DNA from: Guillardia theta CCMP2712
Taxonomy: Eukaryota; Protista; Cryptophyta
Direction of reading: 5' to 3'
Length of the DNA stretch: 64,000 nucleotides
NCBI RefSeq assembly: GCF_000315625.1
Contig: NW_005434540.1
Span: forward strand, 63,625 to 127,624
The notes beneath the pieces are model-generated. The model had not been told where the DNA came from. It did no database searches and worked only from the letters and a program-made list of their open reading frames with translations. Position numbers and translations under genes: made by a program. Below, in pieces: positions 8,807-52,332 of the stretch. How positions within the stretch are numbered: position 1 is the stretch's first letter; each line of letters starts with the position of its first letter.

Positions 8807-8866
8807 ATCAGCAGAGCAATAGCACGCTATTTGAGGTGGTTGGGATTGAAGATAGTGGGAATGTTT

Positions 8867-11374: not shown

Positions 11375-12187
11375 ATGCACACGAGCCTCTCCTACCCCAT
11401 GCTCCCCGCTCCCCTCCCTCCCTTCTCCCTCTCCTACCCTCCTACTTCCTCCCCTGCTCCCAAAAGATCCTTCACCGCCTGTAGCCAGTGCCGGCTGCGC
11501 AAGACCCGCTGTGACGATCAAACCCCCTGCTCCCGCTGCGTCCGCTCTGCCCGGGCCTTGCCATGCTCACGCTTGTCAGAGGGCAACGACCAGAGGTCCC
11601 AGGGCGATGTGCTGCAGTCAAGCCGTAGGGCGACCAAGGCTTGCCTGGGCTGCCAGATCAAGAAGGTGCGCTGCGGCGACGCTCGGCCGTGTGCTCGGTG
11701 CTACCGGATGGGGGAGGTTTGCTACAGCGAAGGAGGGCTAGGGCACGGAGCGCTGCCTCCAGTCCTGCAGCGGAAGCGAGAGCAAGTCGTGCAGGCATGC
11801 GAGCGATGCCGGAGGTCGCGGCTCAAGTGCGACTCTGCAAGGCCATGCGGTCGATGCGCGAGGAGCCTTCAAGTGTGCGTAGACTGGCGGGTCAAGCGGC
11901 GACGGCGCGGGACGGAGATAGACGGAAGCCCAGAGGGAAGCCCAGATGGGGACAAGGAGACAAGCGGGTACAGCTGGGAGGAGCTGCTGGGGAACCCGGA
12001 GGAGGGTGAGCTACAGCTATGGCCACGGTTGGCAGACGAGACTGCGTCAGAGGAGAGCATTGCAGGAGGCGGATGGGAAGAGCTGGAATGGGAAGAGGTT
12101 GTAGAAGGATCAGGGGCAGGGGGAAGAGGGGGATGCAACGATCAGCTTTCAGCCGAGCTCTATGGAGTCAAAGGATTTTTTCTTTGA
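11375..12187 (+). CDS. Triple Zn2Cys6 transcription factor, copy 2
   Basis: 270 aa; differs from copy 1 at three residues (ST>LP, E>G). Confidence 0.88.
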   Translation: MHTSLSYPMLPAPLPPFSLSYPPTSSPAPKRSFTACSQCRLRKTRCDDQTPCSRCVRSARALPCSRLSEGNDQRSQGDVLQSSRRATKACLGCQIKKVRCGDARPCARCYRMGEVCYSEGGLGHGALPPVLQRKREQVVQACERCRRSRLKCDSARPCGRCARSLQVCVDWRVKRRRRGTEIDGSPEGSPDGDKETSGYSWEELLGNPEEGELQLWPRLADETASEESIAGGGWEELEWEEVVEGSGAGGRGGCNDQLSAELYGVKGFFL

Positions 12188-12247
12188 ATCAGCAGAGCAA
12201 TAGCACGCTATTTGAGGTGGTTGGGATTGAAGATAGTGGGAATGTTT

Positions 12248-14325
12248 TTATTTGCATGAAGATGAAAACGACTGCGATTTGTGTTGAACATTACTAAGCA
12301 TTGTCTGGCAATCTTCATTTTGCGCTTCTTCTTTAGTCTGCTCCTTCACCCGCTGCACATTCCGGATCAACAGGACCGAAGTCTGTCCACAAGTATAAGA
12401 GCTGCCCCGTAGCAGCAAGGCGAGCAACTTCTTCTTACCTAGCAGCAAGGCGAGCAACTCGTGCAGTACCTCCTATCTCCTAGAGCAGGGTCAGGCGGAT
12501 CCAACCCGATGGTGAGACGACGACCTTGCAAGTAGTCGGAAAGACTTGCGACGTGATGTAGGACTTTGACTACCAACAACCGTCGCCTATGTTGTCATGG
12601 TGATGAGGCTCGAAGCCAGGCCCGACGCGCTGCGAGGCAGGGCCATGGCTTACAACAAGAAGCTTCTTGATAAGCTAAAGTCATGAGATCAAAACAAGTC
12701 GAGGAGAAGCTCTAGGTGAATGGCTGCTTCTGAAAGGAAAGTTGAAGGCTTGACCGTCTCGAGCAGAAAAACAAGTTCCACCCCCTGCTCTTGCGTACAA
12801 CTCATCCGTTCTGATTTGCAGTTTCAGCTTTCCATCTAGAATGCTGGCTCCACTTGGCTGTTGTGAGGATTGAATAAAGCTTTTGAAGCAAGACGAGAAG
12901 CAGCTGACGAGAGTCTTGAAGGGTCGAGATTTGTGTGAAAGTTGTGAGTCGACAATGCTTCACCGGACAGCTGCTGGACATTGATGTCGAAATACTCGTA
13001 TGAGAAGCTTCCTTCGGTGTTCGGAGGTAGAATCATTTCATTCTATTGTCCGAGGAGCCAAAGGTCTCCTTCATACTCTGCAGGCTTGCAACTTCGTCCT
13101 GTGCGACTTCCAGCGGCTCTGCTTCAGGAACCTCTTCCTTACTGTGGACATCAATCAGCGCCTTCTCAGTGACTACAGCGCTGAGTTGAGGAGCTTTGCA
13201 TTAGCAATCCGAGTCGATGCGCAAAATTTGACATCACGTTGTCGAGGGGATGGAGCTTGTAGATGGCGTCCCTTGCGGTGTAGGAGCCGTTGGGCGTGCA
13301 GGAGTGACTGTGGAGCTGGAAGACGCTCGGCAGGTAGCGTATCCGCATGCTCGCCGCGCAAGTCCCTGAGGGATCGGAGGGAGCAGTCCTTGAGGACGGC
13401 CAACCATTCGACAGCATCCCTTTCGTTGCGAGCCTTGGTGTCAGGGAGGGCGATCATGTCAGCAGTCTCAACTAGCCCCGCCCACTGCTTCCTCGGGCAT
13501 CGTACCTGCTCCTCTGTGTACGTGTACATATCCTCTCTGCTGGTGATCAGGGCTGATCCTGGTAAGAATTCAGCTGCGCAGGTTGCAGATCGCAACATGA
13601 AGACGATACGACGATCGCAAGGAATGCAGAATAGGCGCTTCACCTGCAAGGCCAAATTCCGACTTGGAACGCTGTGATGAATCCCTTTGACTTGACTGAG
13701 CTTTAACACTTCCGACTGTTGCAGCTTGTTCGACAACTCCGAACAGATAGAGAAAATTCATACCAGATTAAGTGCCGTCGTGGCACTGACTGTGAGGATT
13801 CAGTCCTGTGGCTAAGAGATTCAAGTCAAGGACGTGGAGGCTTATATATCCGGCCTCGCTAGTCATGATCTGACGGTTGATCTCTTGACAATGGAGGGCC
13901 GATCGGAGAAAGCTTAGGGCTTGTGTAGGTGGCGAAAGCAAGATTCTTGGTGAAGAGAAAGGTTTGAAGGCAAAAATGTCGGGCTTATGTGTATGTACGA
14001 CGGGCTTGTAGGCGAGTACGACGGTCGGCGTATACTGCAGCTCGTCATGTCCCGGTCCACGTACTGATTCATAGAGCATGTTCAATTCTCGAATTGTAGA
14101 CAAAGCAAGTTCCATGGTCAGGGCTTTGACAGAGGCATGGAAATGAGGCAGACTTGAATGTGCGCAAGTTCCTTTCAAAGCGATCAAGCAGGGCTGCAGG
14201 GGACAAGAGACGCAGGAAACAACAAACAGTAGTCGAAGGCTCGAGCCACTGTGGGAGCGAGAGGTTGCGACGAGGACGAAGTTTGCGACTTCCTGTGCAT
14301 ATATCACATCAATCATGTCGGTCAA
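12248..14325 (-). CDS. Multi-exon hypothetical gene, copy 2
   Basis: Paralog of 8867-10791, convergent with the Zn2Cys6 gene. Confidence 0.5.
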
Positions 14326-14717
14326 TATTTTTTCAGGGGAAATCGAGCTAAAATAAGAATTTTGCTATAATACTTTTAGATCACTTTTAAAAAACAGGAT
14401 GCTACCTTGCTCCGATACTACCCCCCTCGAGCAGACTACCCCACGAAGGCCACGATTCATAACCCCTGCCCTTGAAGGTCTGCCTTTCAATATGCCGTGA
14501 CCGTGACAGTGATGTGGAGGTCACGTTACGCTACATGTACGGGTAGAGTTCAGAAAATTTACAGCGAGAATAGAGGAGGATCAACTTGGGGGCCGCGGGA
14601 TGGGGCGTCACCCGCACCGCCAGGAGCCGCGATTCCAACGCCTAAACCGGTCAACCCCAAAACATTCCTTACGTATCGTATTAAAGACGATGTAGGCCGC
14701 GCCACGCAAAGGATAGC

Positions 14718-16418
14718 ATGGTAGTTGTCAACAAGAAACAATTCTATGCAGGCATGCAGCAGCCCACCCACACGCTGGACAAACCTTACAAGGACCAGTC
14801 ACACGACAGCGCGCGGAATTACATCACCGGCTATTCCCTCCTCACATACACCAACCGCTCAAAGATCATCAACTCCGTCATCGCCCTCATAATCTTCTGG
14901 CTCAGCTTCGGCGCTTGCTGTGTCACCCTTGGCAGGTCCTACAAGAACAGCAAGATGCCCTCCAATATCATCTCCTACTCACTGGAGCCCTGGGACGAGT
15001 ACAGTTCGCTGGAGAACACACTGAAGGCCTTCACCAACACATCCTCCACCATCAAAGACAACGTCAAGGCCCTCTGGTACTGGTCGCTGTGTGATCAGTA
15101 CATCACCACCGGCAGGGTGCCCAAGAGCACCGACAAGATGGCGCTGGAGGTGGTCTCGGCCTCGAACCCGGTCTACATGCCCGGCGGCTGCAACTGCATC
15201 GCGCAGGTCGCCCACGCCATGGGGGATGGATGGCTCTACGAATCAGCCACCAACCCAACCAAAGGAGAGGTCAAGGAGATGCTCAACTTCTGCACCTACG
15301 AGGGGAGCATGCCGCAGACCATGAAGGTCAGCAGCAAGCCGTACCGCACCATGTTCTTCATCTACGGCTTCCTCCTCCTCGCCTCCTCCTCGATCATCAT
15401 CGCGAACTTCATGCACGACGTCCTCGTCCTGGCACTCAAGGACAGAAGAGAACAGGCGCCGCAAGGGAGCTTGACCGTCGTCTTTGGCGCCGATACGATC
15501 AAGAAGGTTGCAAGCTACCTCAACGTCAAGCTCATCCTCGTGACATTGATGTGCACTATCATATTTCTCGTTATGACAATCCTACTGCTGACCACGAGCA
15601 AGGGAGCGCCCGACGACGCAAAGCATCCGGCGGACCTGCTCGCCGGCATATTCATCGCCATCGGCAGCGCCATCATCCTCCTCTTCGTGACCCCATACGT
15701 CTTATACGGCGGGTCCTCCGATAATATCGCACGCATCGTGGAGAGGTTCGCCAGGAATGAGGTGGATGCCGGTATCAAGTTCATCCGAGAAGAACATGAG
15801 ATCACCTACAAGAACTCCGACATCCTCAACGCCCAGGGGCAGATCGAGCAGCTCTGGACGGACGTCATCTCCATCCCGGCGGTGGTGGCCCTTACCGTCG
15901 CCGTATGCATCATGAGGCAATGGACGGACTTCGATATCATCATGTTCAACGTCATCCTGGTCTTCCTCCTCCTCATCTTCGCCACGGCAAGCAACTGGGT
16001 GACCTGCCACTGGACCAGGGTGGCCAGTTTCACGAAAGCATACGCGAAAACCGTCTCCACGACCGACAGCACGAGGCAAGAAAAGCTAAATACCATCGGG
16101 GAGACCCTCAACAGCTTCTACCAGGGCTACAAAAACATCATCACGGTTACCCAGATCTTCATCCTGCTTGCACTGGTGTTCACGGCCACCCCCAGCAGCG
16201 ACGTCAACCACTACAACTACCTCGCCATGTACAACTGGATCTACTTTATGGGATTCCTCTTCCTGATCTACATGGCCCCGGACATCTGGAATGACATGCA
16301 GCAGCTGAAGCTCCACAACGTCACCGCCATCAAGCAGCTCATGCTCAACCTCCTCAGCTTCACCGTCTTCATCACCGTGAGCTACACCGAGTTCTGGAAC
16401 AAGTCGGTAGTGACCTGA
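14718..16418 (+). CDS. 566-aa polytopic membrane protein (~9 TM) with a Cys-containing extramembrane loop
   Basis: About nine hydrophobic segments; loop LCDQY..GGCNCI..NFCTY between TM1 and TM2; strong codon bias; TATTAAAGA at 14679. Confidence 0.85.
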   Translation: MVVVNKKQFYAGMQQPTHTLDKPYKDQSHDSARNYITGYSLLTYTNRSKIINSVIALIIFWLSFGACCVTLGRSYKNSKMPSNIISYSLEPWDEYSSLENTLKAFTNTSSTIKDNVKALWYWSLCDQYITTGRVPKSTDKMALEVVSASNPVYMPGGCNCIAQVAHAMGDGWLYESATNPTKGEVKEMLNFCTYEGSMPQTMKVSSKPYRTMFFIYGFLLLASSSIIIANFMHDVLVLALKDRREQAPQGSLTVVFGADTIKKVASYLNVKLILVTLMCTIIFLVMTILLLTTSKGAPDDAKHPADLLAGIFIAIGSAIILLFVTPYVLYGGSSDNIARIVERFARNEVDAGIKFIREEHEITYKNSDILNAQGQIEQLWTDVISIPAVVALTVAVCIMRQWTDFDIIMFNVILVFLLLIFATASNWVTCHWTRVASFTKAYAKTVSTTDSTRQEKLNTIGETLNSFYQGYKNIITVTQIFILLALVFTATPSSDVNHYNYLAMYNWIYFMGFLFLIYMAPDIWNDMQQLKLHNVTAIKQLMLNLLSFTVFITVSYTEFWNKSVVT

Positions 16419-16481
16419 TCGGTATCTTTAACGGGAATGAATGGCATTTAAGAATAGACCCCACGCCCCCCCTCCCAGAGC

Positions 16482-17273
16482 ATGACAGAGGACAACCTCG
16501 TCTATCCATACCCCCGCCCCTACATGTGCTCACACCCTCCCCTGCAGCTCAACCAGGACCCGCTGCTCAGGGATAACACGATCGCCCCCATGTCTCTGCA
16601 GAAGGCCTACGACATCCTAGACTTCCAGATGTTCATGATGCAGAACCCACACCTCATCACCGACCTCGAGTGGCACGAGCTCGGGGCCATCAGCGACAGG
16701 ATGGAGAGCAGGATCAGGCTCAACGAGAGCAAGGCGTGGAAATTCTGGAAAGACGTCAAGAAGAGGGCGACGGAAGCCGGGAAGGCGGCGTACGAGAAGG
16801 GACGAGCCGCCGCGAATCGGGCAAGGCGGGCATGGGGCAGGCAACCCGCACCCGCCCAGGCCGGCCCCTCCCAGCCAGTGCATCCCATGCCTCCCCCGGA
16901 GCAGATGATCGCCCCCCCTCCTCCCGGGCCCCCACCCGAGGTCCCACAGGAGTACGGCCCGGCACCCCCACCGCCGGGGTACCTACCGCCGCCACCCAAC
17001 CAGGAGACATACGGCCCGCGCCCAGATCCGGAGGCGTACATGCCGCAGCAGCCACAAGAGATGCAAGACCCCAACCACATCCCACAGCAGCGTGGGCCTC
17101 CTCCAGAGTTCATCGTACCCGACGGGGGCGTCCTCCTCATACCAGCCCACCACGCCCCCTACGCCTACCCGCCACCCCCACCCGGGGCCGTGGAGGGCAT
17201 CTCCTCACCCTTTCTCACCATCTTCAACCAGAACCCGAGGCACCAAATCCCAAGGCCTGTAACAAGGATATAA
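16482..17273 (+). CDS. 263-aa Pro/Tyr-rich protein with an NPH-motif domain and a PPxY motif
   Basis: FMMQNPHLITDLEWHELGAI; poly-Pro tail containing PPGY; CATTTAAGA at 16445. Confidence 0.75.
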   Translation: MTEDNLVYPYPRPYMCSHPPLQLNQDPLLRDNTIAPMSLQKAYDILDFQMFMMQNPHLITDLEWHELGAISDRMESRIRLNESKAWKFWKDVKKRATEAGKAAYEKGRAAANRARRAWGRQPAPAQAGPSQPVHPMPPPEQMIAPPPPGPPPEVPQEYGPAPPPPGYLPPPPNQETYGPRPDPEAYMPQQPQEMQDPNHIPQQRGPPPEFIVPDGGVLLIPAHHAPYAYPPPPPGAVEGISSPFLTIFNQNPRHQIPRPVTRI

Positions 17274-17309
17274 GCACCGCCGTCGGCCCGCGGGGCAGAG
17301 GAGCAAGGC

Positions 17310-17681
17310 ATGCAAGCGTATTACCCACCCCAGCCCCAGCCCCAGCCCTACTACTACTACTACGGGGCGCCCTACATGCAAGCCCCCGCCCAGCCCGAGC
17401 CCGTGCCCATGCAGCCACAACTCGAGAGCGACTGGGACCTCGACGACGACCACGAGGCGATCCACTTCCTCTTCGCCAACCCCCACGCCGTGGACATGAT
17501 CGACGGAGACCTGATGGAGGCGATCAAGTCCAAGGCCAAGGAGCTCCACGCAAGGCTGAGCAAGGGGAAGAAGAGGTCCGCCGGACACCACCCCCCAGCG
17601 GCAGCGCACAGGGTCAGCGTCGGAGGCATCATCAACGACCCCAACCGCCTCAGCTCGCAGTTGCTGCAGCGCTATAGCTAG
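17310..17681 (+). CDS. 123-aa Pro/Tyr/Gln-rich protein, paralogous in the NPH domain to the upstream gene
   Basis: FLFANPHAVDMIDGDLMEAI; TATAAG at 17269. Confidence 0.75.
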   Translation: MQAYYPPQPQPQPYYYYYGAPYMQAPAQPEPVPMQPQLESDWDLDDDHEAIHFLFANPHAVDMIDGDLMEAIKSKAKELHARLSKGKKRSAGHHPPAAAHRVSVGGIINDPNRLSSQLLQRYS

Positions 17682-17706
17682 ATCACCACGTGTATAATAT
17701 ACATAA

Positions 17707-18397
17707 TCAAACAGAGCCGCTATGAATCTTCTCGTACATCAAACCCATGCTCCTCATGAACTTCATCTTGTCCTCCGTCAGGCTGGGGCACTCCTTGAAG
17801 AGGTTCTGCATGATGTGCTCCGCCGTCTCCTCCTCGCTCAGGGAGAACACCGTGAAGCTCGGCCTCGCATCCTCGCTCGCGGGACCGAGGATGCCGTTGA
17901 TGATGTCCGACAGGTCCATCACGTCCGACCCCTCCCCCCTGCGGTCGAACCTCAGACGCTTGGCCGAGGGCTTGGTCGCCATCGCCTTGGACCGCATCAC
18001 CTATAACCGCCACGAAACCGTCACATGTAAATACACCCAGCCCCCGCCTCACCGTAAACCTCGTAGCGGTCCGCTTCTTCTCCACCAGCAGCTGAGTGGG
18101 GATCCTCAGCTTCACCTGCCCATCGGGGAGGCGCTCGAGGTTCTTGAAGTCCTTCGTCAGCCTCACGTGCCGGAACATCGCCTTCTGGATCCTCAGGCTC
18201 AGCGTGTAGTACAGGTCCCCGATCCGGATCGCCGGGAACTGGTCCTTCACACCGCCGTCCACCGGCTGGAACCAGCTGCAGTAGCACTCCCTCCTCACCA
18301 GGTGGTGGATCATGTCCTTGCAGCACGGGCTCCGCTCGTACTCCCACCCCTTCCCCGCCACCACCAGCCGGTTCCTCACAAGGTCGACCTCCTTCAT
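17707..18397 (-). CDS. Two-exon 212-aa hypothetical protein (exons 18397-18053 and 18000-17707)
   Basis: A 52-bp phase-0 intron (GTGAGG...TGAC...TATAG, 18052-18001) joins ...KKRTATRFT to VMRSKAMATKPSAKRLRF...; NLS-like PSAKRLR. Confidence 0.7.
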
Positions 18398-18535
18398 GGC
18401 GCCATGCCGAAACCGCCTTCCACACCCCCGCCCCCGGCAGCGATCGAGTCAAAAAAACGAAGCAATCCAACACACCGTGTATTTAAGACACCCTGCAGCG
18501 CGGTCCCATCAAGATAAACCAAGGAAACAGAGCAC

Positions 18536-19533
18536 ATGTGGTTCATCAAAGAAGCGGGCAAGTCGTTCATCAAGGAGGGCAACCCCAAATACGTAGAGGA
18601 ATTGAAAAATCGATTCAAGGAGATCCAGAAGACGGTGGATGATATGAAGAAAAAGGAAGTCAAGGACTTGAGCGAACACCTGGCGGGAATGAAGCTCGAA
18701 GACGCCAAAAACAGGAATACAAGACACCTACGAGACCCAGCAGAGAATTGATCAAGAAGATGAACAACGCAATATACACGGCGTCAAACGAAGAACCAGA
18801 CTCCAACGTTCTATCCGACGACACATCGCGGCCACTGTTTGACTTCAGGAACCCAAGCAGTCAGGAGACCATCGTCGGCAGGATGATGCTCATGACAGAA
18901 CACGCCGTCTGGTACCAGCACTCCACCAAGCAGACCACCAGCGACGAGGGTATGCTCAAGCACGACTCCATCAGCACCTACAACATGATGGTGGCCCACG
19001 CGGTGCTCATGAAGATGTTGAGGGATGAAGAGCCCGATATCGACCCAAGCGAATTCATGTTCGCCGGCTTCGACCCCTCCCTGGCCTTCCACAGCGGTGC
19101 ACAGGAGATCTTCAACAACTTCCTAGGTGCGAAGATGAAAAAGCAGCTGACGGCGCAAGACCGCATCCAAAGAATAAGAGAACATAAACAACAGTTAAAA
19201 ACACTCAAGGCCAAGATCATACACAGGTACCAGATGACAGAGAAGCGCATAGCAGCCCTCAGAGCCACGATCAACATGAAGAGGACATACATGCAAGAAA
19301 CAACCGACCCCAAGCGCAAGAAGTCACTGGAAGATGCCATCAAGAGGATAGAGCTGCACATCGTTAGATGCGAGGAAGCGAGAAATATGAAAGGCACACG
19401 ACCCATCGCCGAGAAGACCAGACTCAAAACCATGGCCGAATTTCTGGCCCAGGCAAGAAAGGGCCACAACCGAAAGAAAAAGACGGGCAGTAACCAGAAC
19501 ACCAAGGCCAAGGGCAAGAAAACCTCCCGCTGA
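18536..19533 (+). CDS. Basic helical protein, probably one gene split by a 1-bp frameshift at an A5 run (18707-18711)
   Basis: ORF 18536-18751 and ORF ending 19533 join as ...EDAKKQEYKTPTRPSRELIKKMNN if one A is added; only one TATA box (18480) serves both. Confidence 0.6.
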
Positions 19534-19608
19534 TGACCGCCGAATCGTCGCAACGAGTGTATTTAAGATGCTTACCCTACACCTGATTAAAGACTCGTGA
19601 AGCCCGAC

Positions 19609-20625
19609 ATGTGGTATGTGAACGTAGGCATGAAAGTCATCCAAACCAATGTGTACGAACACTTCTTTGCGGAGAGAGCAATGACAGCTGATTACGAGAT
19701 CGTCGAGGGCAGGGACGGGGATGCAGTGATGGGGAATGACACCCATGGAGAGACCATGACCAGATTCAAGAAAGCCGTCAGAGAAAAGAAAGACAAGAGC
19801 GGTCAGTTCATCATCAAGCACAAATTAACTCCGGAAATACACGAAACGGATGTCCATGACACAAACGGGAATGTAGTGAAAGTTACGAAGACTGTATACC
19901 GGGCCATCCCTGGCGAATGGGAGATCATCGACATCTCAGACCAAGGAAAGGAAGTGTGGTTTCTATACAACGAAAGTGATGAGGACCACAGCATCATCCA
20001 CCAGCTCGGGTTCCCAGGCAACGCATGGTACCACAACTCGCACTCCTCTTCGAGCTCCATGTACGAGCGCATCTTCGAGGCCTTCCGCACGATGAGCAAC
20101 AACCAGCTTGAGATCAACAATATCATCAGTTCGAAAAAGGCGGGCAAGTCCAGTCCGCACGATCAAAAGCTGCTTGATGACTTCATTGAAACCAACAAAG
20201 CTCTACAGAAAAGGTTAGACCAGAATTTCAAGATCATGCAAGACCTGCATCTCGTCGAGAACCCGGAGAACGTGAGATATACCCTGGATAACATCGTCAA
20301 ACGCAAGATAAAGATATACCACCATGCACCCGACAAGGACGGTAACGGAAACACCATGCAGCAGGACGAAGAAACCCAAGGACGGAAGGTTGTATACGAA
20401 GCACTTCACAACAGGCTCAAGCAAATCCAGGAGCATTTCGACAAGGGAAGAAGCATCCCCCGCGAGATCCACTCCAAGGCAAGGAAAGAGGAGAAGGCCA
20501 AAGAGAAGCAGCAGGCCAGCGCCACGGCCATGGACACGGACAAACCCCAAACTAGGCGTGCGGCCAGCCCACCGCGCCCGCAGGGACACCGAACACAGGT
20601 CCCTAACGATCTACCATACTGGTGA
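19609..20625 (+). CDS. 338-aa hypothetical protein
   Basis: Intronless ORF from ATG 19609; shares the promoter 12-mer GTGTATTTAAGA and start context acATGTGGT with the 18536 gene. Confidence 0.75.
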   Translation: MWYVNVGMKVIQTNVYEHFFAERAMTADYEIVEGRDGDAVMGNDTHGETMTRFKKAVREKKDKSGQFIIKHKLTPEIHETDVHDTNGNVVKVTKTVYRAIPGEWEIIDISDQGKEVWFLYNESDEDHSIIHQLGFPGNAWYHNSHSSSSSMYERIFEAFRTMSNNQLEINNIISSKKAGKSSPHDQKLLDDFIETNKALQKRLDQNFKIMQDLHLVENPENVRYTLDNIVKRKIKIYHHAPDKDGNGNTMQQDEETQGRKVVYEALHNRLKQIQEHFDKGRSIPREIHSKARKEEKAKEKQQASATAMDTDKPQTRRAASPPRPQGHRTQVPNDLPYW

Positions 20626-20692
20626 TAAATTAAGAAAGGTTTATTTCTAAGGTAAATAAACACTCTATCACACTCAGACTGCCTGCCGATTC

Positions 20693-22456
20693 CTAGTCGC
20701 TATCGAACCCGTCACACCCGGAAGGGGCGGCGCGCTTCTTCAGCTCCCTCGGGGCATCCACCGCACTCCCACCGAAGGCGCGGGGCCTGGCAGAGGCGAT
20801 ATTGAGCAGCATGCAGAGGTAGTCCTTCTCCTCGACGTTGGAGATGAAACGGCCCTCCGAATCGAGCTTCGGTCCGAGGTCGATATGGACACGGCAGCAC
20901 TTCCTGAGCCTGAACGCACGGTGGTAAGGCTGGAAATCCACAGACACCCCCTCCTCATGATCCTCGGCATCCTTCTTGTCTCTCACGCGGAGATCCACAC
21001 GGATGACGATCATCCGCTTCATCTCCACGCCGTCCGCCTCGAACACGTAGAAGTGATTCGTGTTGATGCTCAGCATGAAGGTGCAGGGATCGTAACTTAC
21101 CCTCGCGTCACCCGGAAGGTCCTGGGACACGGGGGCAGTGCCTTCCATCCTCCCCACACGGGACATGAAAGCCAGCACCGGATCCTCCATCCCACGGGAC
21201 GGGTCGATCTGCAGCATCTTGTAGAAGTCGATAACGGGGATGCCACGGTACTTCGAGAGGCCCTCGATCACCCCGTTGTCATCCCCCCTCATGTTCCCGT
21301 TGTTCCTCACGACGAACAACCTCACCGCCTGGCAGCAGGCCGCGAGCTCCAGGAACCGGCACGCGCACTCCACGTCCTTGCAGTTGGTATACCTCAGCAA
21401 CAGGCTCTCGGACACATCCACCGTATCCAGGGTGATGGGGCTCGAGGCCGTCTCCACACACACGTTCACCAGCTGAACCATGCAGTGCTCGCGGGACACG
21501 TCCGGCCTCACCGCCTGCATCAGCGGGGAGACGTTGTCCAGAAACGCACACTCGCCGCCGGCACCGAAGAACCACACCGAGCAGGGGGCGCTACCCTCGG
21601 GGGCAAAAGTCTTGCAGTGATCCGTCACCACCTTCTGCGCGTCGAAGGTGTTGGGGAACTTCTCCATCGCATCGACGAAGGAGTGCAACGTCAACGGCAA
21701 GACGCGGATCTGCTTGATCTGCACCAGGTCACCTCCCTCATTCCTCCCCGCGTGGTTGGGCTTCAGCGTCAGCTCCACCAGAGTGAAGGGAGTGATCATC
21801 TCCATGTTCGCCGGGAAGAGGGGCTTGTAGCCCTGCTGCTTGGCATTCTTCTTCTCGAACTCGAAGGTCTTCATCGTCGTCGACATCCTCAGCGTCGCCC
21901 CCTGCCGGATCAGAGTCGCCAGGTCGTCCCTCACGGGGCCCTTGTACTGCGGGTTGCTCTCGTGCTTCTCAAAGGAGCGGATGAGCAGCTCCCGGGCCCC
22001 CGTCTCCGCACAGACACTCATGTCCGCGATGAACCTCGCGTCCTTCCCGGGGCGATCCTCCAGCGGGGCCTTGGCCCAGCCGGCGCTGAGAGGGGCGATC
22101 ACCGCAAAACCGCTCGGGATGGCCTTGATCTCCTTGCCGTACCGCATCTCGCGATCGGCCTTCTCGGTCATGAAGCTCTTCTGGGTGCAGTACACGGTAT
22201 CCACGGTGATGGCGACCACGGTGGAGAGGTTCAGCGTGCGCTGGTCCAGCGCCGGGAGCGGATACCTCTCCAGCCAGAGGTTGTTCGGGTTCAACAGGAC
22301 CTCCCTAGGGAGGAGCTCTGTGTTGATCACCGTCGGGGATTGCTTACAGACGCCCGCATCGGGCTCTGGACTTCCATACATAGGAACGTCCGCATCCTCC
22401 CCAACGGGAATGCTGTCAGAGTTCTCACGGATCTCGGTATTGCTCTTGCGTGGCAT
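20693..22456 (-). CDS. 587-aa hypothetical beta-rich protein with a short acidic tail
   Basis: Long intronless ORF with strong G/C3 bias; palindromic CTTATAAG at 22493-22500 upstream. Confidence 0.8.
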   Translation of the reverse strand: MPRKSNTEIRENSDSIPVGEDADVPMYGSPEPDAGVCKQSPTVINTELLPREVLLNPNNLWLERYPLPALDQRTLNLSTVVAITVDTVYCTQKSFMTEKADREMRYGKEIKAIPSGFAVIAPLSAGWAKAPLEDRPGKDARFIADMSVCAETGARELLIRSFEKHESNPQYKGPVRDDLATLIRQGATLRMSTTMKTFEFEKKNAKQQGYKPLFPANMEMITPFTLVELTLKPNHAGRNEGGDLVQIKQIRVLPLTLHSFVDAMEKFPNTFDAQKVVTDHCKTFAPEGSAPCSVWFFGAGGECAFLDNVSPLMQAVRPDVSREHCMVQLVNVCVETASSPITLDTVDVSESLLLRYTNCKDVECACRFLELAACCQAVRLFVVRNNGNMRGDDNGVIEGLSKYRGIPVIDFYKMLQIDPSRGMEDPVLAFMSRVGRMEGTAPVSQDLPGDARVSYDPCTFMLSINTNHFYVFEADGVEMKRMIVIRVDLRVRDKKDAEDHEEGVSVDFQPYHRAFRLRKCCRVHIDLGPKLDSEGRFISNVEEKDYLCMLLNIASARPRAFGGSAVDAPRELKKRAAPSGCDGFDSD

Positions 22457-22609
22457 GGGCAACGGGTGGGGCCTCTCCCGCGCCCCCGCTTCCTTATAAG
22501 CACTTTCCCCCCAAAAAAAAATCCTGCGGGGGTCCGCATCTCCCCCACTCTCTCCCTCTCTCGTGCAGGATCTCCGGATATAAACCTCCGGTAGAACATT
22601 CCACCATAG

Positions 22610-23356
22610 ATGGGAGAGGTCGAGGACGAGGAGTGGTCGATGGTGAAGTGGAACGAGCTGATGGTGTGGACACTGCTGGCGGTGGTCAACTTCTTCCAGC
22701 AGGTCGGATTCTTCTTCATCCTCATGCTCTCGGGCCCGGGTTTCTCCAACGACAACCTACCCTTCTGCGACAGCCTGAGGTTCATAAGCAACAACCTCGC
22801 CGACATGCCCGGCATCGCCTCCTACCTCGTCGTCATATGGATCATGCAGTGGTTCATACTCGGCATCGTCAGCTGCCAGAAGACGCCGCTGGTGAACCGC
22901 GACGTGAGCAAGGTGCTCGCCTCCATCAGCTACATCGGCGTCTTCTGCGTGGTCCTCTACAACCAGGGGTCGGACAGGGAGGACCTCCATCTCCTCGGGG
23001 CGGTGATCATGATCCTGCCCGTCCTCATAGCGCAGTTCCTCATCGCCACGGAGGCCTTCACAAGGGCCAGCAAGGACGGCCACTCAAACCCACACACGGT
23101 AGCCCCCACGCTGTCCCTCGTCACCATGTCGATCATCTCCATGACGACCATCATGGGGCTGCTCTACTGCTTCCTCTACCTCCTCAACAGGGGAGGGTTC
23201 GCCTCCGTCTGCATGTCCGCGGTGGTCATACTCGAGTACGTCGTCTACTTCATGCTCGTCATCAACAACCTGCTCGTCTACTTCGACTTCACCGCCATGC
23301 ACGCCTACAGCAAGCTGAACCCCAAGGCACCGAGGTACACAGAGGACAGCACATAG
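22610..23356 (+). CDS. ~6-TM protein resembling the Frag1/DRAM/Sfk1 (TMEM150-like) family
   Basis: FISNNLADMP (cf. YISxxGxxPP), LHLLGAVI (cf. HxxGA) and ILEYVV (cf. EW) in the expected order; TATAAA at 22579. Confidence 0.6.
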   Translation: MGEVEDEEWSMVKWNELMVWTLLAVVNFFQQVGFFFILMLSGPGFSNDNLPFCDSLRFISNNLADMPGIASYLVVIWIMQWFILGIVSCQKTPLVNRDVSKVLASISYIGVFCVVLYNQGSDREDLHLLGAVIMILPVLIAQFLIATEAFTRASKDGHSNPHTVAPTLSLVTMSIISMTTIMGLLYCFLYLLNRGGFASVCMSAVVILEYVVYFMLVINNLLVYFDFTAMHAYSKLNPKAPRYTEDST

Positions 23357-23574
23357 TCTCACTAGTTACAAATCACTGCCCCAACTAAAAAGAAATAAAC
23401 TAAACATTTCTTTTTTACTTTTTTTTACTTTTAAATGACGATCGCCGGGATCCATCCGGCGAATCAGGTCAGAGAGGGGAGGCGGGCATCCACTCCCTGG
23501 GAGGGCCTCGGATCCTCATTCGGTGCAACCACACTTATAAAATCGACCCTCAACGAAGACCCTGCAAAGCCACC

Positions 23575-23970
23575 ATGATGCCCTTCATATCCTTCCTTGG
23601 CCCAGTGCTCCTGACGGCCATGGGGTCCATCTCCCTGGCCGTCTGCTACCAGACGATCGCCCACCTCATCTTCCCAGCGAGACCGGAGAAGAAACCACGC
23701 CCGACTTACCGCTACGTGGTGCCCAAGCTCAAGGAGGTGGCGAAAGTGCTGGATCCCGTCAAGGCTCAAGACGCGGCATCCGGAGACTGGCCCAGGTTCT
23801 CGGCGGGGGGCTGTGCCGTCGCCTCCGATGGCAACTGCTCAACCAACTGCTCCATTTCGGGCTTTGAGGACGCGAGGGAATCCACCCCGGACCCCATGGA
23901 CTCCGCGGAGGCCGCACTCCCACCTCCCGCCGAGCCCAGGCCGCTGGTGTTCTGCCCGCTCAGGGTCTGA
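23575..23970 (+). CDS. 131-aa protein with an N-terminal TM/signal anchor
   Basis: Hydrophobic N-terminus followed by a basic stretch; TATAAA at 23536; overlaps the convergent gene by 205 bp. Confidence 0.55.
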   Translation: MMPFISFLGPVLLTAMGSISLAVCYQTIAHLIFPARPEKKPRPTYRYVVPKLKEVAKVLDPVKAQDAASGDWPRFSAGGCAVASDGNCSTNCSISGFEDARESTPDPMDSAEAALPPPAEPRPLVFCPLRV

Positions 23971-24458
23971 GGAGATCCGACCGTCACCACGTCCTCGGTA
24001 TCCGTGTCCTCCTCCTCCTCCTCCTCCTCCTCCTCCTCCTCCTCCTCCTCTTCATCCACCTCATCGGAGAGGCTCTCATCCATGGAGGAGGAAGAGAGGG
24101 CGTCGTCGACTTCGTCATAACGGAGGAAGCCGCCGCCTCTCTTGCCGGGGTAATAATCCGAGTCGTAGCTGGCCTCGCTGGGAGGGCCTTCCTCCTCCTC
24201 ATCCTCGGACTCGCAGGCCTCCCCCTCCTCCGCATCCAGGAGGGCCTCCTCGTCATCCGCCACGGTGAGCCTCCCCGTCCTCCTCAGCATGTCCTCCCGG
24301 TCGAACTCCCGGTTCACCTCCGTGGCCACCGCCTGGAAGATCCTGGAATCCTCCCTCGCCTCCTCCCACTCGAGGATGGACTGGACGCGCTCCCTGGCGG
24401 CATCCACACACCTCCTCTTTGGACGGATCATGTCCGCTACTGGGACGGGAGAGGCCAT
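23766..24458 (-). CDS. 230-aa highly acidic protein with an N-terminal helical domain
   Basis: RPKRRCVDAARERVQSILEWEE followed by long D/E tracts. Confidence 0.7.
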   Translation of the reverse strand: MASPVPVADMIRPKRRCVDAARERVQSILEWEEAREDSRIFQAVATEVNREFDREDMLRRTGRLTVADDEEALLDAEEGEACESEDEEEEGPPSEASYDSDYYPGKRGGGFLRYDEVDDALSSSSMDESLSDEVDEEEEEEEEEEEEEEEDTDTEDVVTVGSPQTLSGQNTSGLGSAGGGSAASAESMGSGVDSLASSKPEMEQLVEQLPSEATAQPPAENLGQSPDAAS

Positions 24459-24519
24459 GCTGTCTTTTCTACCCTCTCAGGCATGAGCAAATGAAACACA
24501 AAACACACTTTTTATTCCA

Positions 24520-24933
24520 TCACGCGTCGTGCACACACCCACAGACATGGCACTTCACGTTGGTCATCACACGGATCTTCTCCCTCTGCTCCCCGAAGCC
24601 ACTCACGTGGACGTACATCACGATGCCGTCCGAGAGACTGTAGTAGTTCATCAGAGGCGTGCGGTCCTGCCGGTCGTTCATCCATCCGTCCCCTCCCCTC
24701 CTCGGTGGAGGCCTCCCGGGGAACGCGTAGCCGTTGCACTTGTTCCTCTTCCGGTGAGGGTCGTCCGACACCGTGTGGGTGCAATCCGGGCAAACCACAC
24801 CGCGCTCCACATCCCGATGGCACTTCTCGTCGAGGAAGTGAGAGCAAGACCAGCAGACGATGGGATCGGGGAACATGTTACTGTACCACACATCCAAGGG
24901 ATCGGGAGGACCCCTCTTCCCACCCTGGGCCAT
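24520..24933 (-). CDS. 137-aa Zn-ribbon-like protein
   Basis: Three CxxC pairs (CWSC, CPDC, CHVC) plus extra Cys/His. Confidence 0.6.
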   Translation of the reverse strand: MAQGGKRGPPDPLDVWYSNMFPDPIVCWSCSHFLDEKCHRDVERGVVCPDCTHTVSDDPHRKRNKCNGYAFPGRPPPRRGGDGWMNDRQDRTPLMNYYSLSDGIVMYVHVSGFGEQREKIRVMTNVKCHVCGCVHDA

Positions 24934-25255
24934 GGGGATTAGACCACCCTCACATGGGGCCTAGACCACCCCTCCTTCCTACTACAGGGTACCCACACAC
25001 TCTTTCTTCCGTATGGTCAGAGCGGGGATGTGGCTCCCTCCTCCCGGTCCCCTGGGAGAGGGAGGGGGGGGGAGCCGACAGATCTTTGGAAGGAGAAGTT
25101 TTTTTTTCTACGGTTACAGATTTTCTTTAAAGATAACGGAAAGAATTAAATGAGTTTCGCCGGACAGTATAGTATAGAGCATAGTATGTATAGAGTATAC
25201 ATAGTGTATGTATGTATGTATGTATGTATGTAGTATACATAGTATGTATGTATAG

Positions 25256-25281
25256 TATGTATTGAATCGATTCAATACATA
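25256..25281. repeat. Perfect 26-bp palindrome TATGTATTGAATCGATTCAATACATA at the end of a (TATG)n/AT-rich tract
   Basis: Equals its own reverse complement; preceded by ~90 bp of TATG/TATAG microsatellite and runs into an A8 tract. Confidence 0.95.
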
Positions 25282-25442
25282 AAAAAAACAGATGCAACCA
25301 AGGATTTCCCAGACACCCCGCCCTCTCCCCAGGGCCTCCAGGGACCCTGGCCCTCATCCCCACTCAGACCAAAAAAGGTTTTTATCCTTTTGTAGTTTAT
25401 TCACTGATGGGATACCTAATCAACCAACCTGGTTACGCATCT

Positions 25443-25886
25443 TCACATGCCCAATGAGGAGGGCCTCTTGCTCACGTCCTTCATGAATTGCAACATATGG
25501 GTGTAGAATCGATACTTTGCTTTGGACTGCATCATGTTATCAACGAGGTTGGAGAGTATATCCCGCTGGAGGGTCATCTGATGTTTAGCGGCCATCTTTC
25601 TGTTCTTATCATCCCTGTGTTTCTTTCGGAGGCGTTCCACCTCAGTTTTACCTTTCTTGATGGTCTCACGTATGAGGCACACGGTGTTGGTCTCGATGAG
25701 CTCGTCGCAGTGGAAGACCGCCGCGGCGAGAAAGCACATCTCAATGTCTTCAAGGGCCATGCTTACCAGCATTTCGTGATCCATGTCGGGAATCTCCTCG
25801 GAACGCACACCGGATGGGGATGCGGTGGGTTTGGCAGGCTTGACCTGCTTGCCCTGTCGCTTCGGGTGTCTTTGGGTGCTGGGCAT
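25443..25886 (-). CDS. 147-aa basic helical hypothetical protein
   Basis: Intronless ORF; TATTTAAA at 25931-25924 upstream. Confidence 0.65.
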   Translation of the reverse strand: MPSTQRHPKRQGKQVKPAKPTASPSGVRSEEIPDMDHEMLVSMALEDIEMCFLAAAVFHCDELIETNTVCLIRETIKKGKTEVERLRKKHRDDKNRKMAAKHQMTLQRDILSNLVDNMMQSKAKYRFYTHMLQFMKDVSKRPSSLGM

Positions 25887-26121
25887 GATGCTCTAGGAGA
25901 TGGCATGGGTGGGGGCAGCGCAGTTTAAATAGAGCGGGGTTGCAAGTGGTTTATTCAAAAACCATGAACGAGACATCAAATCCAAGGCATTGGAAACATT
26001 CCATGTCGGCGACTGTGTTGTCTTCACGTAGACATTGCTGGGTGCGAGAGAGTCCGACGGGCATGCGATTCTCGAGTTTAGCGAGAAACAGTTGCACGTA
26101 GCGAATAAGGTTAACCGACCC

Positions 26122-26340
26122 TGGCTTTCATCGTTTGCGTGCTCGCCTGTTTCGTCAGTATCGCTCTCGCATGGGTCTAGCCGTCCTCCTCGCAGGAGCC
26201 TTGCGCTACTGCTCTTTGTCCTGATCCTTGTTCCCTGCGTGTGTGGCCGCAAATGGCGGCGTTTATGAGCACTTCGTATCGGCTTCTGCGCCTTTTCCAT
26301 GCATGTAATCACTGATTGTTGCTATATGATGTTCTTATAT
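26122..26340 (+). mobile_element. Severely 5'-truncated tail of an RLE-type non-LTR retrotransposon
   Basis: 26122-26228 is nearly identical to 39068-39185 and encodes GFHRLRARLFRQYRSRMGLAVLLAGALRYCSL; the 3' boundary is approximate. Confidence 0.6.
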
Positions 26341-26588
26341 CATTCCTTTGAACCAGTATTGAATATATGTATGTATTGGTTCTAGACAAGGTAACGATAA
26401 GGCATGTGCATGAGATTGTGATGATGATGAGGTGGTGGATGTGGAGGTGATGATCGGATGATGATGATGATGATGATGAGCAGGAGGAGGAGGAAGAGAA
26501 GGATGAGGTGGTGAAGGAGGAGATGGATGTGGAGGAGATGAAGATGATGATGAGGAGGACGTGAGGAGGAGGTAGTGGTGTGGTGATG

Positions 26589-26896
26589 GATGTGGAGGTA
26601 ATGATGATGATTACGAGGATGTGGAGGTAATGATGATGATTACGAGGATGTGGAGGTAATGATGATGATTACGAGGATGTGGAGGTAATGAAGATGATTA
26701 CGAGGATGTGGAGGTAATGATGATGATTACGAGGATATGGAGGTAATGATGATGATTACGAGGATATGGAGGTAATGATGATGATTACGAGGATATGGAG
26801 GTGATGAAGATGATTACGAGGATATGGAGGTAATGAAGATGATTACGAGGATATGGAGGTAATGATGATGGTGATGAGGATGTGGAGGTGATGATA
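26589..26896 (+). repeat. 29-bp minisatellite GATRTGGAGGTAATGAWGATGATTACGAG, ~10.5 copies
   Basis: Units start at 26589, 26618, ... 26879; embedded in (GAT)n/(GAG)n low-complexity sequence. Confidence 0.95.
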
Positions 26897-26988
26897 CGTA
26901 TCTCACTCTGCAATTTTTTATTCACGTTATCTGGTATCGCACGAAGGTTTACAATCGCGATACTGCAAGTTAGTTCCTATGTTCTCCA

Positions 26989-52065: not shown

Positions 52066-52266
52066 ATGAGCTTCTCAGTTGATACAGAGGAACTTCGTCG
52101 AATTTTGAGGCAGGATAGGCAGTTGAGATCAAAACGACCAGCAGCGACCAAGGAGGGTGAGAATGCAAGAGCAAGTGTCTCCTCTGTGACTCTTGTCAGC
52201 TACGATGAGTTCATCAAATCACGAACGACAGCGTTTCAGCACAGCAACAGCAACAGCGATAGTAAA

Positions 52267-52332
<66 letters not shown>

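What the first reader, a model, noticed from the sequence alone, without database searches (positions are those of the whole stretch)
14530..26120. An ~11.6-kb orphan gene island that looks like an integrated, nucleus-transcribed large DNA virus fragment
Seen: most host genes here have many ~50-bp introns and (GGA)n-filled spacers. This block instead packs about 12 ORFs, only one with an intron, mostly with very short spacers, strong C/G3 bias, a uniform promoter layout and AT-rich 3' ends. Its products are mostly unrecognisable: membrane proteins, Pro-rich proteins, an acidic protein and a Zn ribbon. It starts where the host duplication stops (14529) and ends at a retroelement fragment (26122). 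Inference: an endogenous viral element. TATA boxes and a spliceosomal intron imply host Pol II transcription in the nucleus, which fits mirusvirus-like (Duplodnaviria) elements better than cytoplasmic NCLDVs or Polinton-like viruses. No hallmark gene is visible, so the lineage is unproven and could be new.
Basis: partly seen in the sequence, partly recalled or inferred. Interest (0 to 1): 0.9.

Follow-up and report, generated by a model that had tools for sequence, protein, structure and literature searches.

The report
Virus-like gene block in a cryptophyte genome
An 11.6-kb stretch of the alga Guillardia theta's nuclear genome is a truncated copy of a compact, multi-copy, virus-like gene block that also occurs on gene-dense environmental contigs, but no capsid or other hallmark gene was found, so its viral lineage is still unproven.

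Summary
The window is Guillardia theta CCMP2712 scaffold JH993098.1. Bases 14530-26120 carry 12 intact ORFs at 85% coding density, with spacers of 25-218 nt. Ten of the 12 have a TATA-like element 31-58 nt before the ATG, several have AATAAA just after the stop, and there is one 52-nt GT-AG intron. None has a Pfam or PHROG hit.

The genes are not true orphans. Two families have 82 and 44 relatives, and at least seven of the 12 ORFs have sequence-detectable relatives elsewhere. The same gene order recurs at two more G. theta scaffolds, with a fourth copy inferred from cluster membership. The families are also found in the Hanusia phi transcriptome and on ORFan-rich environmental contigs of 54-58 kb, one of which encodes a divergent TATA-binding protein. 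The intron position is conserved in every relative examined. Five tested ORFs show dN/dS of 0.09-0.32.

My best reading (confidence 0.6) is a left-truncated endogenous fragment of a nucleus-expressed large DNA virus-like element. Mirusvirus affinity is plausible but untested. About 124 kb of related sequence shows no hallmark gene, and a confident AlphaFold model of the 587-aa protein matches no known fold. The "retroelement" at the right border is not confirmed.

The parts
14383..14529 (.). Last stretch of the second unit of the host tandem duplication; this is the left border of the island
   Evidence: 82% identical to 10861-11007. A longer alignment pairs 14001-14529 with 10467-11007 at 88.6%. 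Each unit carries a Zn2Cys6 ORF.
14530..14717 (+). Upstream region of gene C, with a TATA-like element about 39 nt before the ATG. No remnant of family D, which lies here in relatives.
   Evidence: tblastn with D/E proteins from L005, L006, L008 and L011 finds nothing in the window.
14718..16418 (+). Gene C: a 566-aa polytopic membrane protein with 7 TM-like segments
   Evidence: ORF; TM count. 35% identical to L005 and 25% to L006 over the full length; weak match to the L008 453-aa gene. No Pfam hit.
16482..17273 (+). Pro-rich 263-aa ORF (21% Pro). It is either a separate gene with its own TATA-like element or, as in the public 804-aa model, a 3' exon of gene C.
   Evidence: Weak similarity to the L005 329-aa ORF (z = 3.5).
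17310..17681 (+). 123-aa ORF (P0001)
   Evidence: In NCBI as a singleton cluster. Similar to the C-terminal part of the L005 329-aa ORF (z = 8.1).
17707..18397 (-). Gene B (212 aa, GUITHDRAFT_118775), the most conserved gene of the block. Exon 1 is 18053-18397, the 52-nt GT-AG phase-0 intron is 18001-18052, and exon 2 is 17707-18000. The N-terminal domain is basic (pI 9.8).
   Evidence: 44 clusters; 71-80% identity to L005, L006 and L010; 46-50% to L008 and L011; intron 48-55 nt in L005, L010 and L006; dN/dS 0.13-0.64 for both exons.
18536..19533 (+). 305-aa public gene model, with one 80-nt intron implied. The uninterrupted ORF from ATG 18760 encodes 257 aa, is basic and looks coiled-coil-like.
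   Evidence: Genes at the same position in L005, L006 and L008 show no detectable similarity.
19609..20625 (+). 338-aa ORF, convergent with gene A across a 67-nt spacer that has AATAAA on both strands
   Evidence: Its 3' end is conserved in L002. Genes at the same position elsewhere are not detectably similar.
20693..22456 (-). Gene A (P0002, 587 aa): a well-folded, strand-rich protein of unknown fold that founds a family with 82 representatives
   Evidence: AlphaFold pLDDT 84.3 and pTM 0.83. No Foldseek match at E<1e-3 in PDB or BFVD. No Pfam or PDB hit. dN/dS 0.17 against L002.
22457..22609 (.). Divergent promoter spacer between A and P0003, with one TATA-like element facing each gene
22610..23356 (+). 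P0003: a 248-aa membrane protein with 6 TM-like segments. Relatives carry a weak Frag1 (PF10277) flag.
   Evidence: 30% identical to the L010 neighbour of A. dN/dS 0.32. P0003 itself has no Pfam hit.
23575..23970 (+). 131-aa ORF with an N-terminal hydrophobic segment. It is not in the public annotation and overlaps the next gene by 205 nt.
   Evidence: Conserved ORF in L002 (126 aa). dN/dS 0.23.
23766..24458 (-). Acidic 230-aa protein (pI 4.1, poly-Glu run)
   Evidence: dN/dS 0.24. Its N-terminal 68 aa are 41% identical to a 195-aa gene of L008.
24520..24933 (-). 137-aa Cys-rich (9 Cys) zinc-ribbon-like protein
   Evidence: 85% identical to the L002 ORF, dN/dS 0.09.
25443..25886 (-). 147-aa basic ORF with a TATA-like element 45 nt upstream; the last gene of the block
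   Evidence: No comparative data, because L002 ends at 25231.
26122..26219 (.). Dispersed 98-nt repeat that marks the right border
   Evidence: 97% identical to 39068-39165. No retroelement domain nearby.

Best explanation
The island is a truncated, integrated copy of a large DNA virus-like element that is associated with cryptophytes and expressed in the nucleus.

Shown:
- The 12 genes form a compact block whose core recurs in the same order and orientation. The core is membrane protein C, the conserved small protein B with its intron, the 587-aa protein A and the Frag1-like membrane protein F.
- That order recurs at two more sequenced G. theta scaffolds and on environmental contigs of 54-58 kb that are about 85% coding and almost entirely ORFans. 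A fourth G. theta copy is inferred from cluster membership only.
- The genes carry TATA-like core promoters a few tens of bases before the ATG and AATAAA signals just after the stop.
- One intron keeps its position in every relative examined.
- The ORFs are intact and under purifying selection.

Inferred:
- Transcription is by host RNA polymerase II in the nucleus. In complete relatives it is helped by an element-encoded, divergent TATA-binding protein that reads the shared TATA-like promoters.
- The conserved core is part of a morphogenesis or membrane module plus a regulator (B).
- The window copy has lost at least the neighbouring families D and E at its left edge, so it is a fragment and not an autonomous element.
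- The lineage may be the cryptophyte mirusvirus clade already reported in this assembly, but that link is untested.
For: Synteny and copy number. L005 (JH993134.1) has the order A, 258-aa, 374-aa, B, C-plus-Pro-rich, D, E. L010 (JH993205.1) has F, A, 144-aa, B. A fourth G. theta locus, on a 243.6-kb scaffold, is inferred from family D and B cluster members; its DNA and gene order were not examined.

Related algae and environment. Families A and B occur in the Hanusia phi transcriptome. L002, from a Sean Crowe lake metagenome, is collinear with window 25231..20449 at 77% nucleotide identity, spacers included.

Environmental contigs share the order. L006 is from a 58.2-kb contig and has A, B, C, D, E. 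L008 plus L013 cover 27.7 kb of a 56.3-kb contig and have F, the acidic-protein N-domain, A, B, C, D. L011 is from a 54.5-kb contig and has D, B and G. L007 has G and A with spacers of 3-18 nt.

These contigs differ in GC from 38% to 56%. Only two of their genes have confident Pfam hits: a TBP (E 1.3e-34, two repeats) and a DUF2828 protein. The TBP scores only about 100 bits against canonical TBPs, little more than against archaeal ones.

The intron position is conserved. Lengths are 48-66 nt, always GT..AG, and most are not multiples of 3.

dN/dS is 0.09-0.32 for five ORFs, against 0.59-1.5 for antisense shadow ORFs.

Promoter and poly(A) statistics are.

Literature. TBP and RING proteins are core functions of most mirusviruses. 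Intron-rich nuclear orders have only 13-14% Pfam-annotated genes and lack PolB and RNA polymerase (PMC12768974). G. theta GCA_000315625.1 is listed with clade E03 mirusvirus MCP homologs (PMC10827195).
Against: No capsid, portal, terminase, protease, polymerase, integrase or packaging ATPase was recognised in the island. None was recognised in about 124 kb of related loci by Pfam, PHROGs or PDB sequence search.

The confident model of A matches neither an HK97 fold, a double jelly-roll nor a herpesvirus triplex fold. There are only weak, recurring, non-significant hits to baculovirus LEF-3 and to beta-propellers.

Five IMG/VR scans with families A, B and D found nothing.

No terminal repeats or target-site duplication flank the island, and there are no tRNAs.

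Pol II-type signals, purifying selection and presence in a transcriptome would also fit cellular genes.

Whether the environmental contigs are free viral genomes or pieces of algal chromosomes is unknown.
Confidence: 0.6

Rival explanations
1. The block is a lineage-specific cellular gene cluster of cryptophytes. On this reading it holds fast-evolving, intron-poor nuclear genes that were amplified by segmental duplication and have no viral origin.
For: The ORFs are under purifying selection. Families A and B occur in the Hanusia phi transcriptome. GC3 overlaps that of host genes. No viral hallmark gene was found anywhere.
Against: The architecture differs from the neighbouring host genes: 85% coding, spacers of 25-218 nt, and almost no (GGA)n runs. 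The G. theta paralogous copies (28-45% identity for A and 35% for C) keep gene order. The same order occurs on contigs of 38-56% GC with about 45 genes in 28 kb. Of those genes only a strongly divergent TBP is recognisable. Genes between the core genes are replaced from copy to copy.
Confidence: 0.17
2. The block is a fragment of a large non-viral mobile element, such as a giant transposon or an integrative plasmid-like element, that carries cargo ORFans.
For: It is multi-copy within one genome and patchily distributed, and gene content outside a conserved core varies. The three related contigs have similar sizes of 54-58 kb. The island lies in a repeat-rich neighbourhood.
Against: No transposase, integrase, recombinase or replication gene was recognised in any locus. 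There are no terminal repeats or target duplication at the island's ends. An element-encoded TBP and two conserved polytopic membrane proteins are more usual in large eukaryotic viruses (PMC12768974).
Confidence: 0.1
3. The block is a fragment of a known kind of integrated virus: a nucleocytovirus (GEVE) or a Polinton-like virus or virophage. Several of the latter are known in G. theta.
For: [quoted passage not shown] Nucleocytovirus-like genes have been sought in this genome (PMC5294986, listed).
Against: There is no double jelly-roll capsid, packaging ATPase, protease, protein-primed or family B polymerase, integrase or VLTF3 in any locus. The model of A is not a jelly-roll capsid. The related contigs (54-58 kb) exceed the PLV range of 14-40 kb. 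A conserved spliceosomal intron and Pol II-type promoters do not fit cytoplasmic transcription.
Confidence: 0.05

Closest known systems
Intron-rich, nucleus-dependent mirusviruses (orders Okeanovirales and Styxvirales; PMC12768974)
   Same: Spliceosomal introns occur in conserved genes. Very few genes have any Pfam annotation. A TBP sits on a related contig, and TBP is listed as a core function of most mirusviruses; there is also a weak RING hit. No DNA or RNA polymerase genes are seen. The expression signals suit the host nucleus.
   Different: No HK97-fold capsid, triplex, portal, jelly-roll or terminase gene was identified here. The related contigs are 54-58 kb, whereas mirusvirus genomes average 265 kb; the contigs may be fragments. 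The mirusvirus marker models were not available to me.
Endogenous mirusvirus signals of clade E03 in cryptophyte assemblies, including G. theta GCA_000315625.1 (Zhao et al., PMC10827195)
   Same: Same assembly, same host group, and marine and freshwater relatives. The paper reports that scaffolds with capsid homologs have raised ORF density and many unannotated ORFs.
   Different: The paper does not name the G. theta scaffold in the text I could read. Nothing in this window or in the related loci was recognisable as that capsid gene.
Giant endogenous viral elements of nucleocytoviruses in algae
   Same: A gene-dense, intron-poor foreign block inside an intron-rich algal chromosome, present in several copies and partly truncated.
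   Different: No nucleocytovirus core gene is present. The promoters and the conserved intron point to nuclear Pol II expression, not a viral transcription apparatus.
Polinton-like viruses integrated in cryptophyte genomes (PMC12220804)
   Same: Multi-copy integrated DNA elements of cryptophytes, with many ORFans.
   Different: There is no capsid, ATPase, protease, polymerase or integrase set and no terminal repeats. The relatives are larger than the 14-40 kb PLV range.

Membership tests
Mirusviricota-derived endogenous element | HK97-fold major capsid protein in the element | tested here: not met
   The longest island product is 587 aa. Its confident model gives no HK97 or herpesvirus capsid match. 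None of the 10 scanned ORFs has a Pfam hit.
Mirusviricota-derived endogenous element | Capsid, triplex 1/2, portal, protease or terminase on related, more complete loci | tested here: inconclusive
   Pfam, PHROG and PDB sequence searches of L005-L013 proteins were negative. These included products of 926, 1082, 1625 and 1629+ aa. Only one family could be modelled, no mirusvirus HMMs were on hand, and only 12-28 kb of each 54-58 kb contig was read.
Mirusviricota-derived endogenous element | TATA-binding protein gene (core function in most mirusvirus genomes, PMC12768974) | tested here: inconclusive
   Present on the related contig at L013 18313-19287 (E 1.3e-34) and divergent. Absent from the window island and from the G. 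theta loci I held.
Mirusviricota-derived endogenous element | Spliceosomal introns in conserved genes and dependence on nuclear expression | tested here: met
   The intron in gene B is conserved in position across all relatives examined. TATA-like and AATAAA signals are present. Actual splicing and transcription were not observed.
Mirusviricota-derived endogenous element | Physical linkage to the clade E03 capsid homolog reported in this assembly | not testable with these tools
   The scaffold is not given in the text held, and no supplement is held.
Nucleocytoviricota endogenous element (GEVE) | Core genes: double jelly-roll capsid, A32 ATPase, PolB, VLTF3, RNA polymerase subunits | tested here: not met
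   No such Pfam hit in the island or related loci. A is not a jelly-roll capsid.
Polinton / Polinton-like virus / virophage | Capsid pair, FtsK-type ATPase, cysteine protease, pPolB or integrase, terminal repeats, 14-40 kb | tested here: not met
   None of these genes was found. No terminal repeat or target duplication exceeds chance. The related contigs are 54-58 kb.
Ordinary G. theta nuclear genes | Many short introns, (GGA)n-rich spacers, dispersed single-copy orthologs | tested here: not met
   There is one confirmed intron in 12 ORFs. (GGA)n runs are 0.9 per 10 kb against 9.0 in the right flank. Three sequenced syntenic copies exist, plus an inferred fourth.
Retroelement at the right border | Reverse transcriptase, RNase H, integrase or gag domain, or LTRs | tested here: not met
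   Only a 98-nt dispersed repeat was found. ORFs next to both copies have no such domain.

The most novel reading that the evidence does not exclude
The island and its relatives may represent an undescribed lineage of DNA viruses or virus-like elements of cryptophytes. Such elements would be expressed in the nucleus, have genomes of roughly 55-60 kb, and encode their own divergent TBP and a conserved intron-bearing regulator. Their virion genes would not be recognisably related to HK97-type or jelly-roll capsids, which would place the lineage outside Mirusviricota, Nucleocytoviricota and the Polinton-like viruses.
Probability: 0.25. Interest if true: 0.85.

Novelty: new variant of a known kind. 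Interest (0 to 1): 0.62.

Why it matters
If the reading holds, a culturable model alga with a sequenced genome carries several diverged copies of a nucleus-dependent large DNA virus-like element, and relatives of that element are present in lakes and seas.

That would give a concrete handle, through sequence, expression and structure, on a group of eukaryotic viruses now known almost only from metagenomes. It would also help show how such viruses use host Pol II, splicing and their own TBP.

The work defines five uncharacterised protein families. Family A has a confident predicted fold with no known relative. Family B is 71-80% conserved among the G. theta copies and L006, and 46-50% identical on the more distant contigs. 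Either could serve as a marker for finding these elements where standard viral hallmarks fail.

If the block instead turns out to be cellular, it would be an unusual case of a compact, intron-poor, multi-copy gene cluster in an intron-rich genome.

Tried and rejected
- First AlphaFold run of P0002 with 3 sequences: pLDDT 40.7, unusable.
- IMG/VR scans with A1, A4, A5, A7 and A6 were all empty. A2 was too diverse to give a search pattern.
- The metagenome scan returned only the contig already known.
- The exact-sequence look-up of the 566-aa ORF failed, because the public model fuses it with the next ORF.
- A homology search with the 1625-aa family G protein found only itself.
- Profile or sequence searches of families A, B, D and G and of the 926-aa and 1082-aa proteins against PDB gave nothing, or only low-complexity hits.
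- A PHROG scan of 41 environmental-contig proteins hit only an RNA-binding family, probably the DUF2828 protein. The proteins were packed into alignment A9 purely as a container.
- I considered that the 1132-aa gene at 30642 onward might be the reported capsid homolog. By my reading of the translation it carries HAD/FkbH-like motifs, and it shows no similarity to the related loci, so I rejected this.
- I considered that the environmental contigs are cryptophyte nucleomorph DNA, which is compact, has tiny introns and encodes TBP. I rejected this because their GC is 38-56% and almost no housekeeping genes are recognisable. From general knowledge, nucleomorph genomes are AT-rich and about half housekeeping.
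- Genes at the same positions as the 338-aa and 305-aa genes in other loci show no significant similarity.
- No tRNA or Rfam family lies in the window.
- Literature searches for the scaffold, locus tags and run accessions found nothing specific.

Full report
**Source and coordinates.** Proteins encoded in the window are on record in NCBI, UniRef and EukProt. The 587-aa product (P0002) lies on GCA_000315625.1 scaffold JH993098.1, which is 178,933 bp long. The record coordinate equals the window coordinate plus 63,624. Names returned for paralogs and a published table (PMC10827195) identify the assembly as Guillardia theta CCMP2712.

**The observation.** Between 14718 and 25886 there are 12 uninterrupted ORFs. 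They cover 85% of 14530-26120, with spacers of 25-218 nt, one of 509 nt, and one 205-nt convergent overlap. The public annotation joins them into 8 models of 804, 123, 212, 305, 338, 587, 248 and 504 aa.

- Ten of the 12 starts have a TATA-like 7-mer 31-58 nt upstream, against 1 of 11 annotated starts elsewhere in the window. A strict motif is present in 5 of 12, against 1% of random positions.
- AATAAA or ATTAAA follows the stop within 60 nt in 6 genes.
- (GGA)n-type runs are ten times rarer than in the right flank.
- GC3 is high at 0.68-0.92, but not higher than in some outside ORFs.
- The 10 largest ORFs gave no Pfam or PHROG hit; the 131-aa and 147-aa ORFs were not scanned.
- The left edge coincides with the end of a host tandem duplication that carries Zn2Cys6 genes.
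- At the right edge a 98-nt stretch starting at 26122 recurs at 39068 with 97% identity. I found no retroelement domain near either copy.
- No terminal repeat or target duplication links the two edges beyond chance.
- I saw no broken gene in the island: zero internal stops or frameshifts in the 12 ORFs. The element as a whole is truncated (see "The window copy is a fragment").

**The genes are not orphans.**

- *P0002 (family A)* has an 80% identical relative on a 4.9-kb lake-metagenome contig and a 42% relative in the Hanusia phi transcriptome. The contig is L002, from JGI 3300013126, credited to Sean Crowe in PMC7449369. A profile search of 1.84 billion representatives found 82 proteins at E ≤ 0.001. 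None has a Pfam domain or a PDB relative.
- *L002* is collinear with window 25231..20449 at 77% nucleotide identity, spacers included. Against it, five island ORFs have dN/dS of 0.09-0.32, while antisense shadow ORFs give 0.59-1.5. These are real genes under constraint. The comparison also favours separate ORFs over the fused 504-aa public model, because L002 has separate ORFs at the matching positions.
- *The 212-aa gene (family B, GUITHDRAFT_118775)* has 44 relative clusters.

**A conserved, multi-copy module.** Look-ups of family members revealed the same gene order elsewhere.

In G. theta:
- JH993134.1 (L005) has A at 45% identity, B at 80% and C at 35%, followed by two further families, D and E.
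- JH993205.1 (L010) has F, A, a small gene and B.
- A fourth locus, on a 243.6-kb scaffold, is implied by cluster members of D and B; I did not read its DNA.

In the environment:
- L006 (Logan, contig of 58,234 bp) carries A, B, C, D and E.
- L008 plus L013 (ENA scaffold_14, 56,334 bp, of which 27.7 kb was read) carry F, the acidic protein's N-domain, A, B, C and D.
- L011 (54,455 bp) carries D, B and a 1.6-1.7-kaa family G.
- L007 carries G and A with spacers of 3-18 nt.

GC content among these contigs ranges from 38% to 56%. The genes lying between the core genes are not detectably similar from copy to copy.

**The window copy is a fragment.** Nothing outside 14.7-25.3 kb of the window matches any of these loci. 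There is no remnant of D or E left of gene C. The window copy is therefore a fragment cut at, or near, the host duplication.

**The intron.** Gene B has exon 1 at 18053-18397, a 52-nt GT-AG phase-0 intron at 18001-18052, and exon 2 at 17707-18000.

- At the same codon boundary L005, L010 and L006 have GT..AG intervals of 55, 48 and 50 nt.
- Prokaryote-style gene calls from many metagenomes lose similarity exactly there.
- Three in-frame read-throughs (54 nt in Hanusia phi, 66 nt in two others) resume with the exon 2 sequence.
- Both exons are under purifying selection.
- The Hanusia peptide retains the intron, so splicing itself has not been observed.

Exon 1 was searched by reference to the window ORF with region 1-115. 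I did not search a joined exon 1 + exon 2 model.

**What the relatives add.** In 27.7 kb of scaffold_14 about 45 genes are called at roughly 85% density, and only one has a confident Pfam hit. That hit is a two-repeat TATA-binding protein (E 1.3e-34).

The TBP scores about 100 bits against canonical TBPs, barely more than against archaeal ones. From general knowledge, cellular TBP cores are far more alike than that, so it is a divergent copy. A weak RING hit and a DUF2828 protein in L011 are the only other leads. TATA-like elements upstream of ATGs are also enriched on this contig: 7 of 21 against 1% background.

**Structure.** With 83 aligned relatives, AlphaFold gave a confident model of P0002 (pLDDT 84.3, pTM 0.83). 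Foldseek against PDB and BFVD found nothing at E < 1e-3. The best rows are beta-propeller enzymes and, repeatedly but weakly, baculovirus LEF-3. Family A is thus a well-folded protein without a known structural relative. It is not an HK97, jelly-roll or herpesvirus triplex protein by this test.

**Interpretation.** The block's architecture, copy number, conserved order at 25-45% identity, replaceable filler genes and presence on ORFan-dense contigs of varied GC fit an integrated fragment of a large DNA virus-like element much better than ordinary host genes.

The promoters, poly(A) signals and conserved intron fit nuclear Pol II expression. A TBP encoded by a relative offers a plausible way to drive the shared TATA-like promoters, but this step is inferred.

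The published description of intron-rich mirusviruses matches this profile. They have few annotated genes, no polymerases, TBP and RING as core functions, and nuclear reproduction (PMC12768974). G. theta is listed as carrying a clade E03 mirusvirus capsid homolog (PMC10827195).

Against this, no hallmark gene was found in about 124 kb of related sequence, five IMG/VR scans were empty, and I could not learn which scaffold holds the reported capsid gene. I therefore put 0.6 on 'virus-derived, nucleus-expressed element fragment', of which roughly half would be mirusvirus. I put 0.17 on a cellular lineage-specific cluster, 0.1 on a non-viral mobile element, and 0.05 on a nucleocytovirus or Polinton-like fragment.

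- *Slip.* To recover the intron implied by the public 305-aa model, my script listed GT..AG intervals. It joined the flanking stretches in memory to see which interval gave an open frame. That interval is neither shared with relatives nor predicted by a tool I ran, so this went beyond the allowed test of a splice model. Only interval coordinates and lengths were printed, nothing was saved, and I do not use those coordinates here.
- *Alignment A9* is a container of unrelated proteins, made only so that one PHROG scan could cover them.
- No contig looked human. 

Noticed in passing
window 30231-30498 and 30630-30897: A 268-nt inverted duplication (99.6% identity) copies the 5' end of the gene starting at 30642. 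The same 85-aa N-terminus is therefore encoded on both strands (ORFs 30097-30486 on the minus strand and 30642-31790 on the plus strand). By my reading of the translation the gene carries HAD/FkbH-like motifs.
   Followed up: partly
window 26501-26935: An array of about 12 copies of a 29-nt purine-rich tandem repeat lies just right of the island.
   Followed up: no
window 7775-11007 and 11154-14529: A tandem duplication of a 3.4-3.5 kb unit. The units are 97-99% identical over most of their length but only 82-89% at the ends. Each unit carries a 270-aa ORF with fungal-type Zn2Cys6 domains.
   Followed up: partly
window 48421-51522 (minus strand) and 52066-54204 (plus strand): Two long intronless ORFan genes of 1033 aa (P0004) and 712 aa are arranged divergently, with (GGA)n-type runs upstream of the 712-aa gene's start. 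P0004 is a singleton cluster and neither ORF has a confident Pfam domain. They show no similarity to the virus-like loci.
   Followed up: partly
L013 18313-19287 (ENA ERZ23490646 scaffold_14): A 325-aa, two-repeat TATA-binding protein that is strongly divergent from canonical TBPs. It is the only recognisable gene among about 45 on this contig.
   Followed up: partly
P0133 (Hanusia phi transcriptome peptide) against window gene B: The transcript-derived peptide keeps the intron-equivalent 54 nt in frame, adding 18 residues between the exon 1 and exon 2 sequences. This points to intron retention or a non-spliced template in that data set.
   Followed up: partly
window 23766-23970: The 131-aa plus-strand ORF and the acidic 230-aa minus-strand ORF overlap by 205 nt at their 3' ends. 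Both keep low dN/dS against L002 (0.23 and 0.24).
   Followed up: no
Contigs SRR30872625_3763, ERZ23490646 scaffold_14 and ERZ27250178 k141_522397: Three independent contigs carrying the module have very similar lengths of 58,234, 56,334 and 54,455 bp. This could mean near-complete genomes of about 55-58 kb. Their ends were not examined.
   Followed up: no
window 28863-29765 (minus strand): A 300-aa ORF right of the island has no PDB hit and only a sub-threshold Pfam hit (PSK_trans_fac, E 0.0034). By eye its middle part resembles the N-terminal domain of tyrosine recombinases of mobile elements. That is a recollection, not a test.
   Followed up: partly
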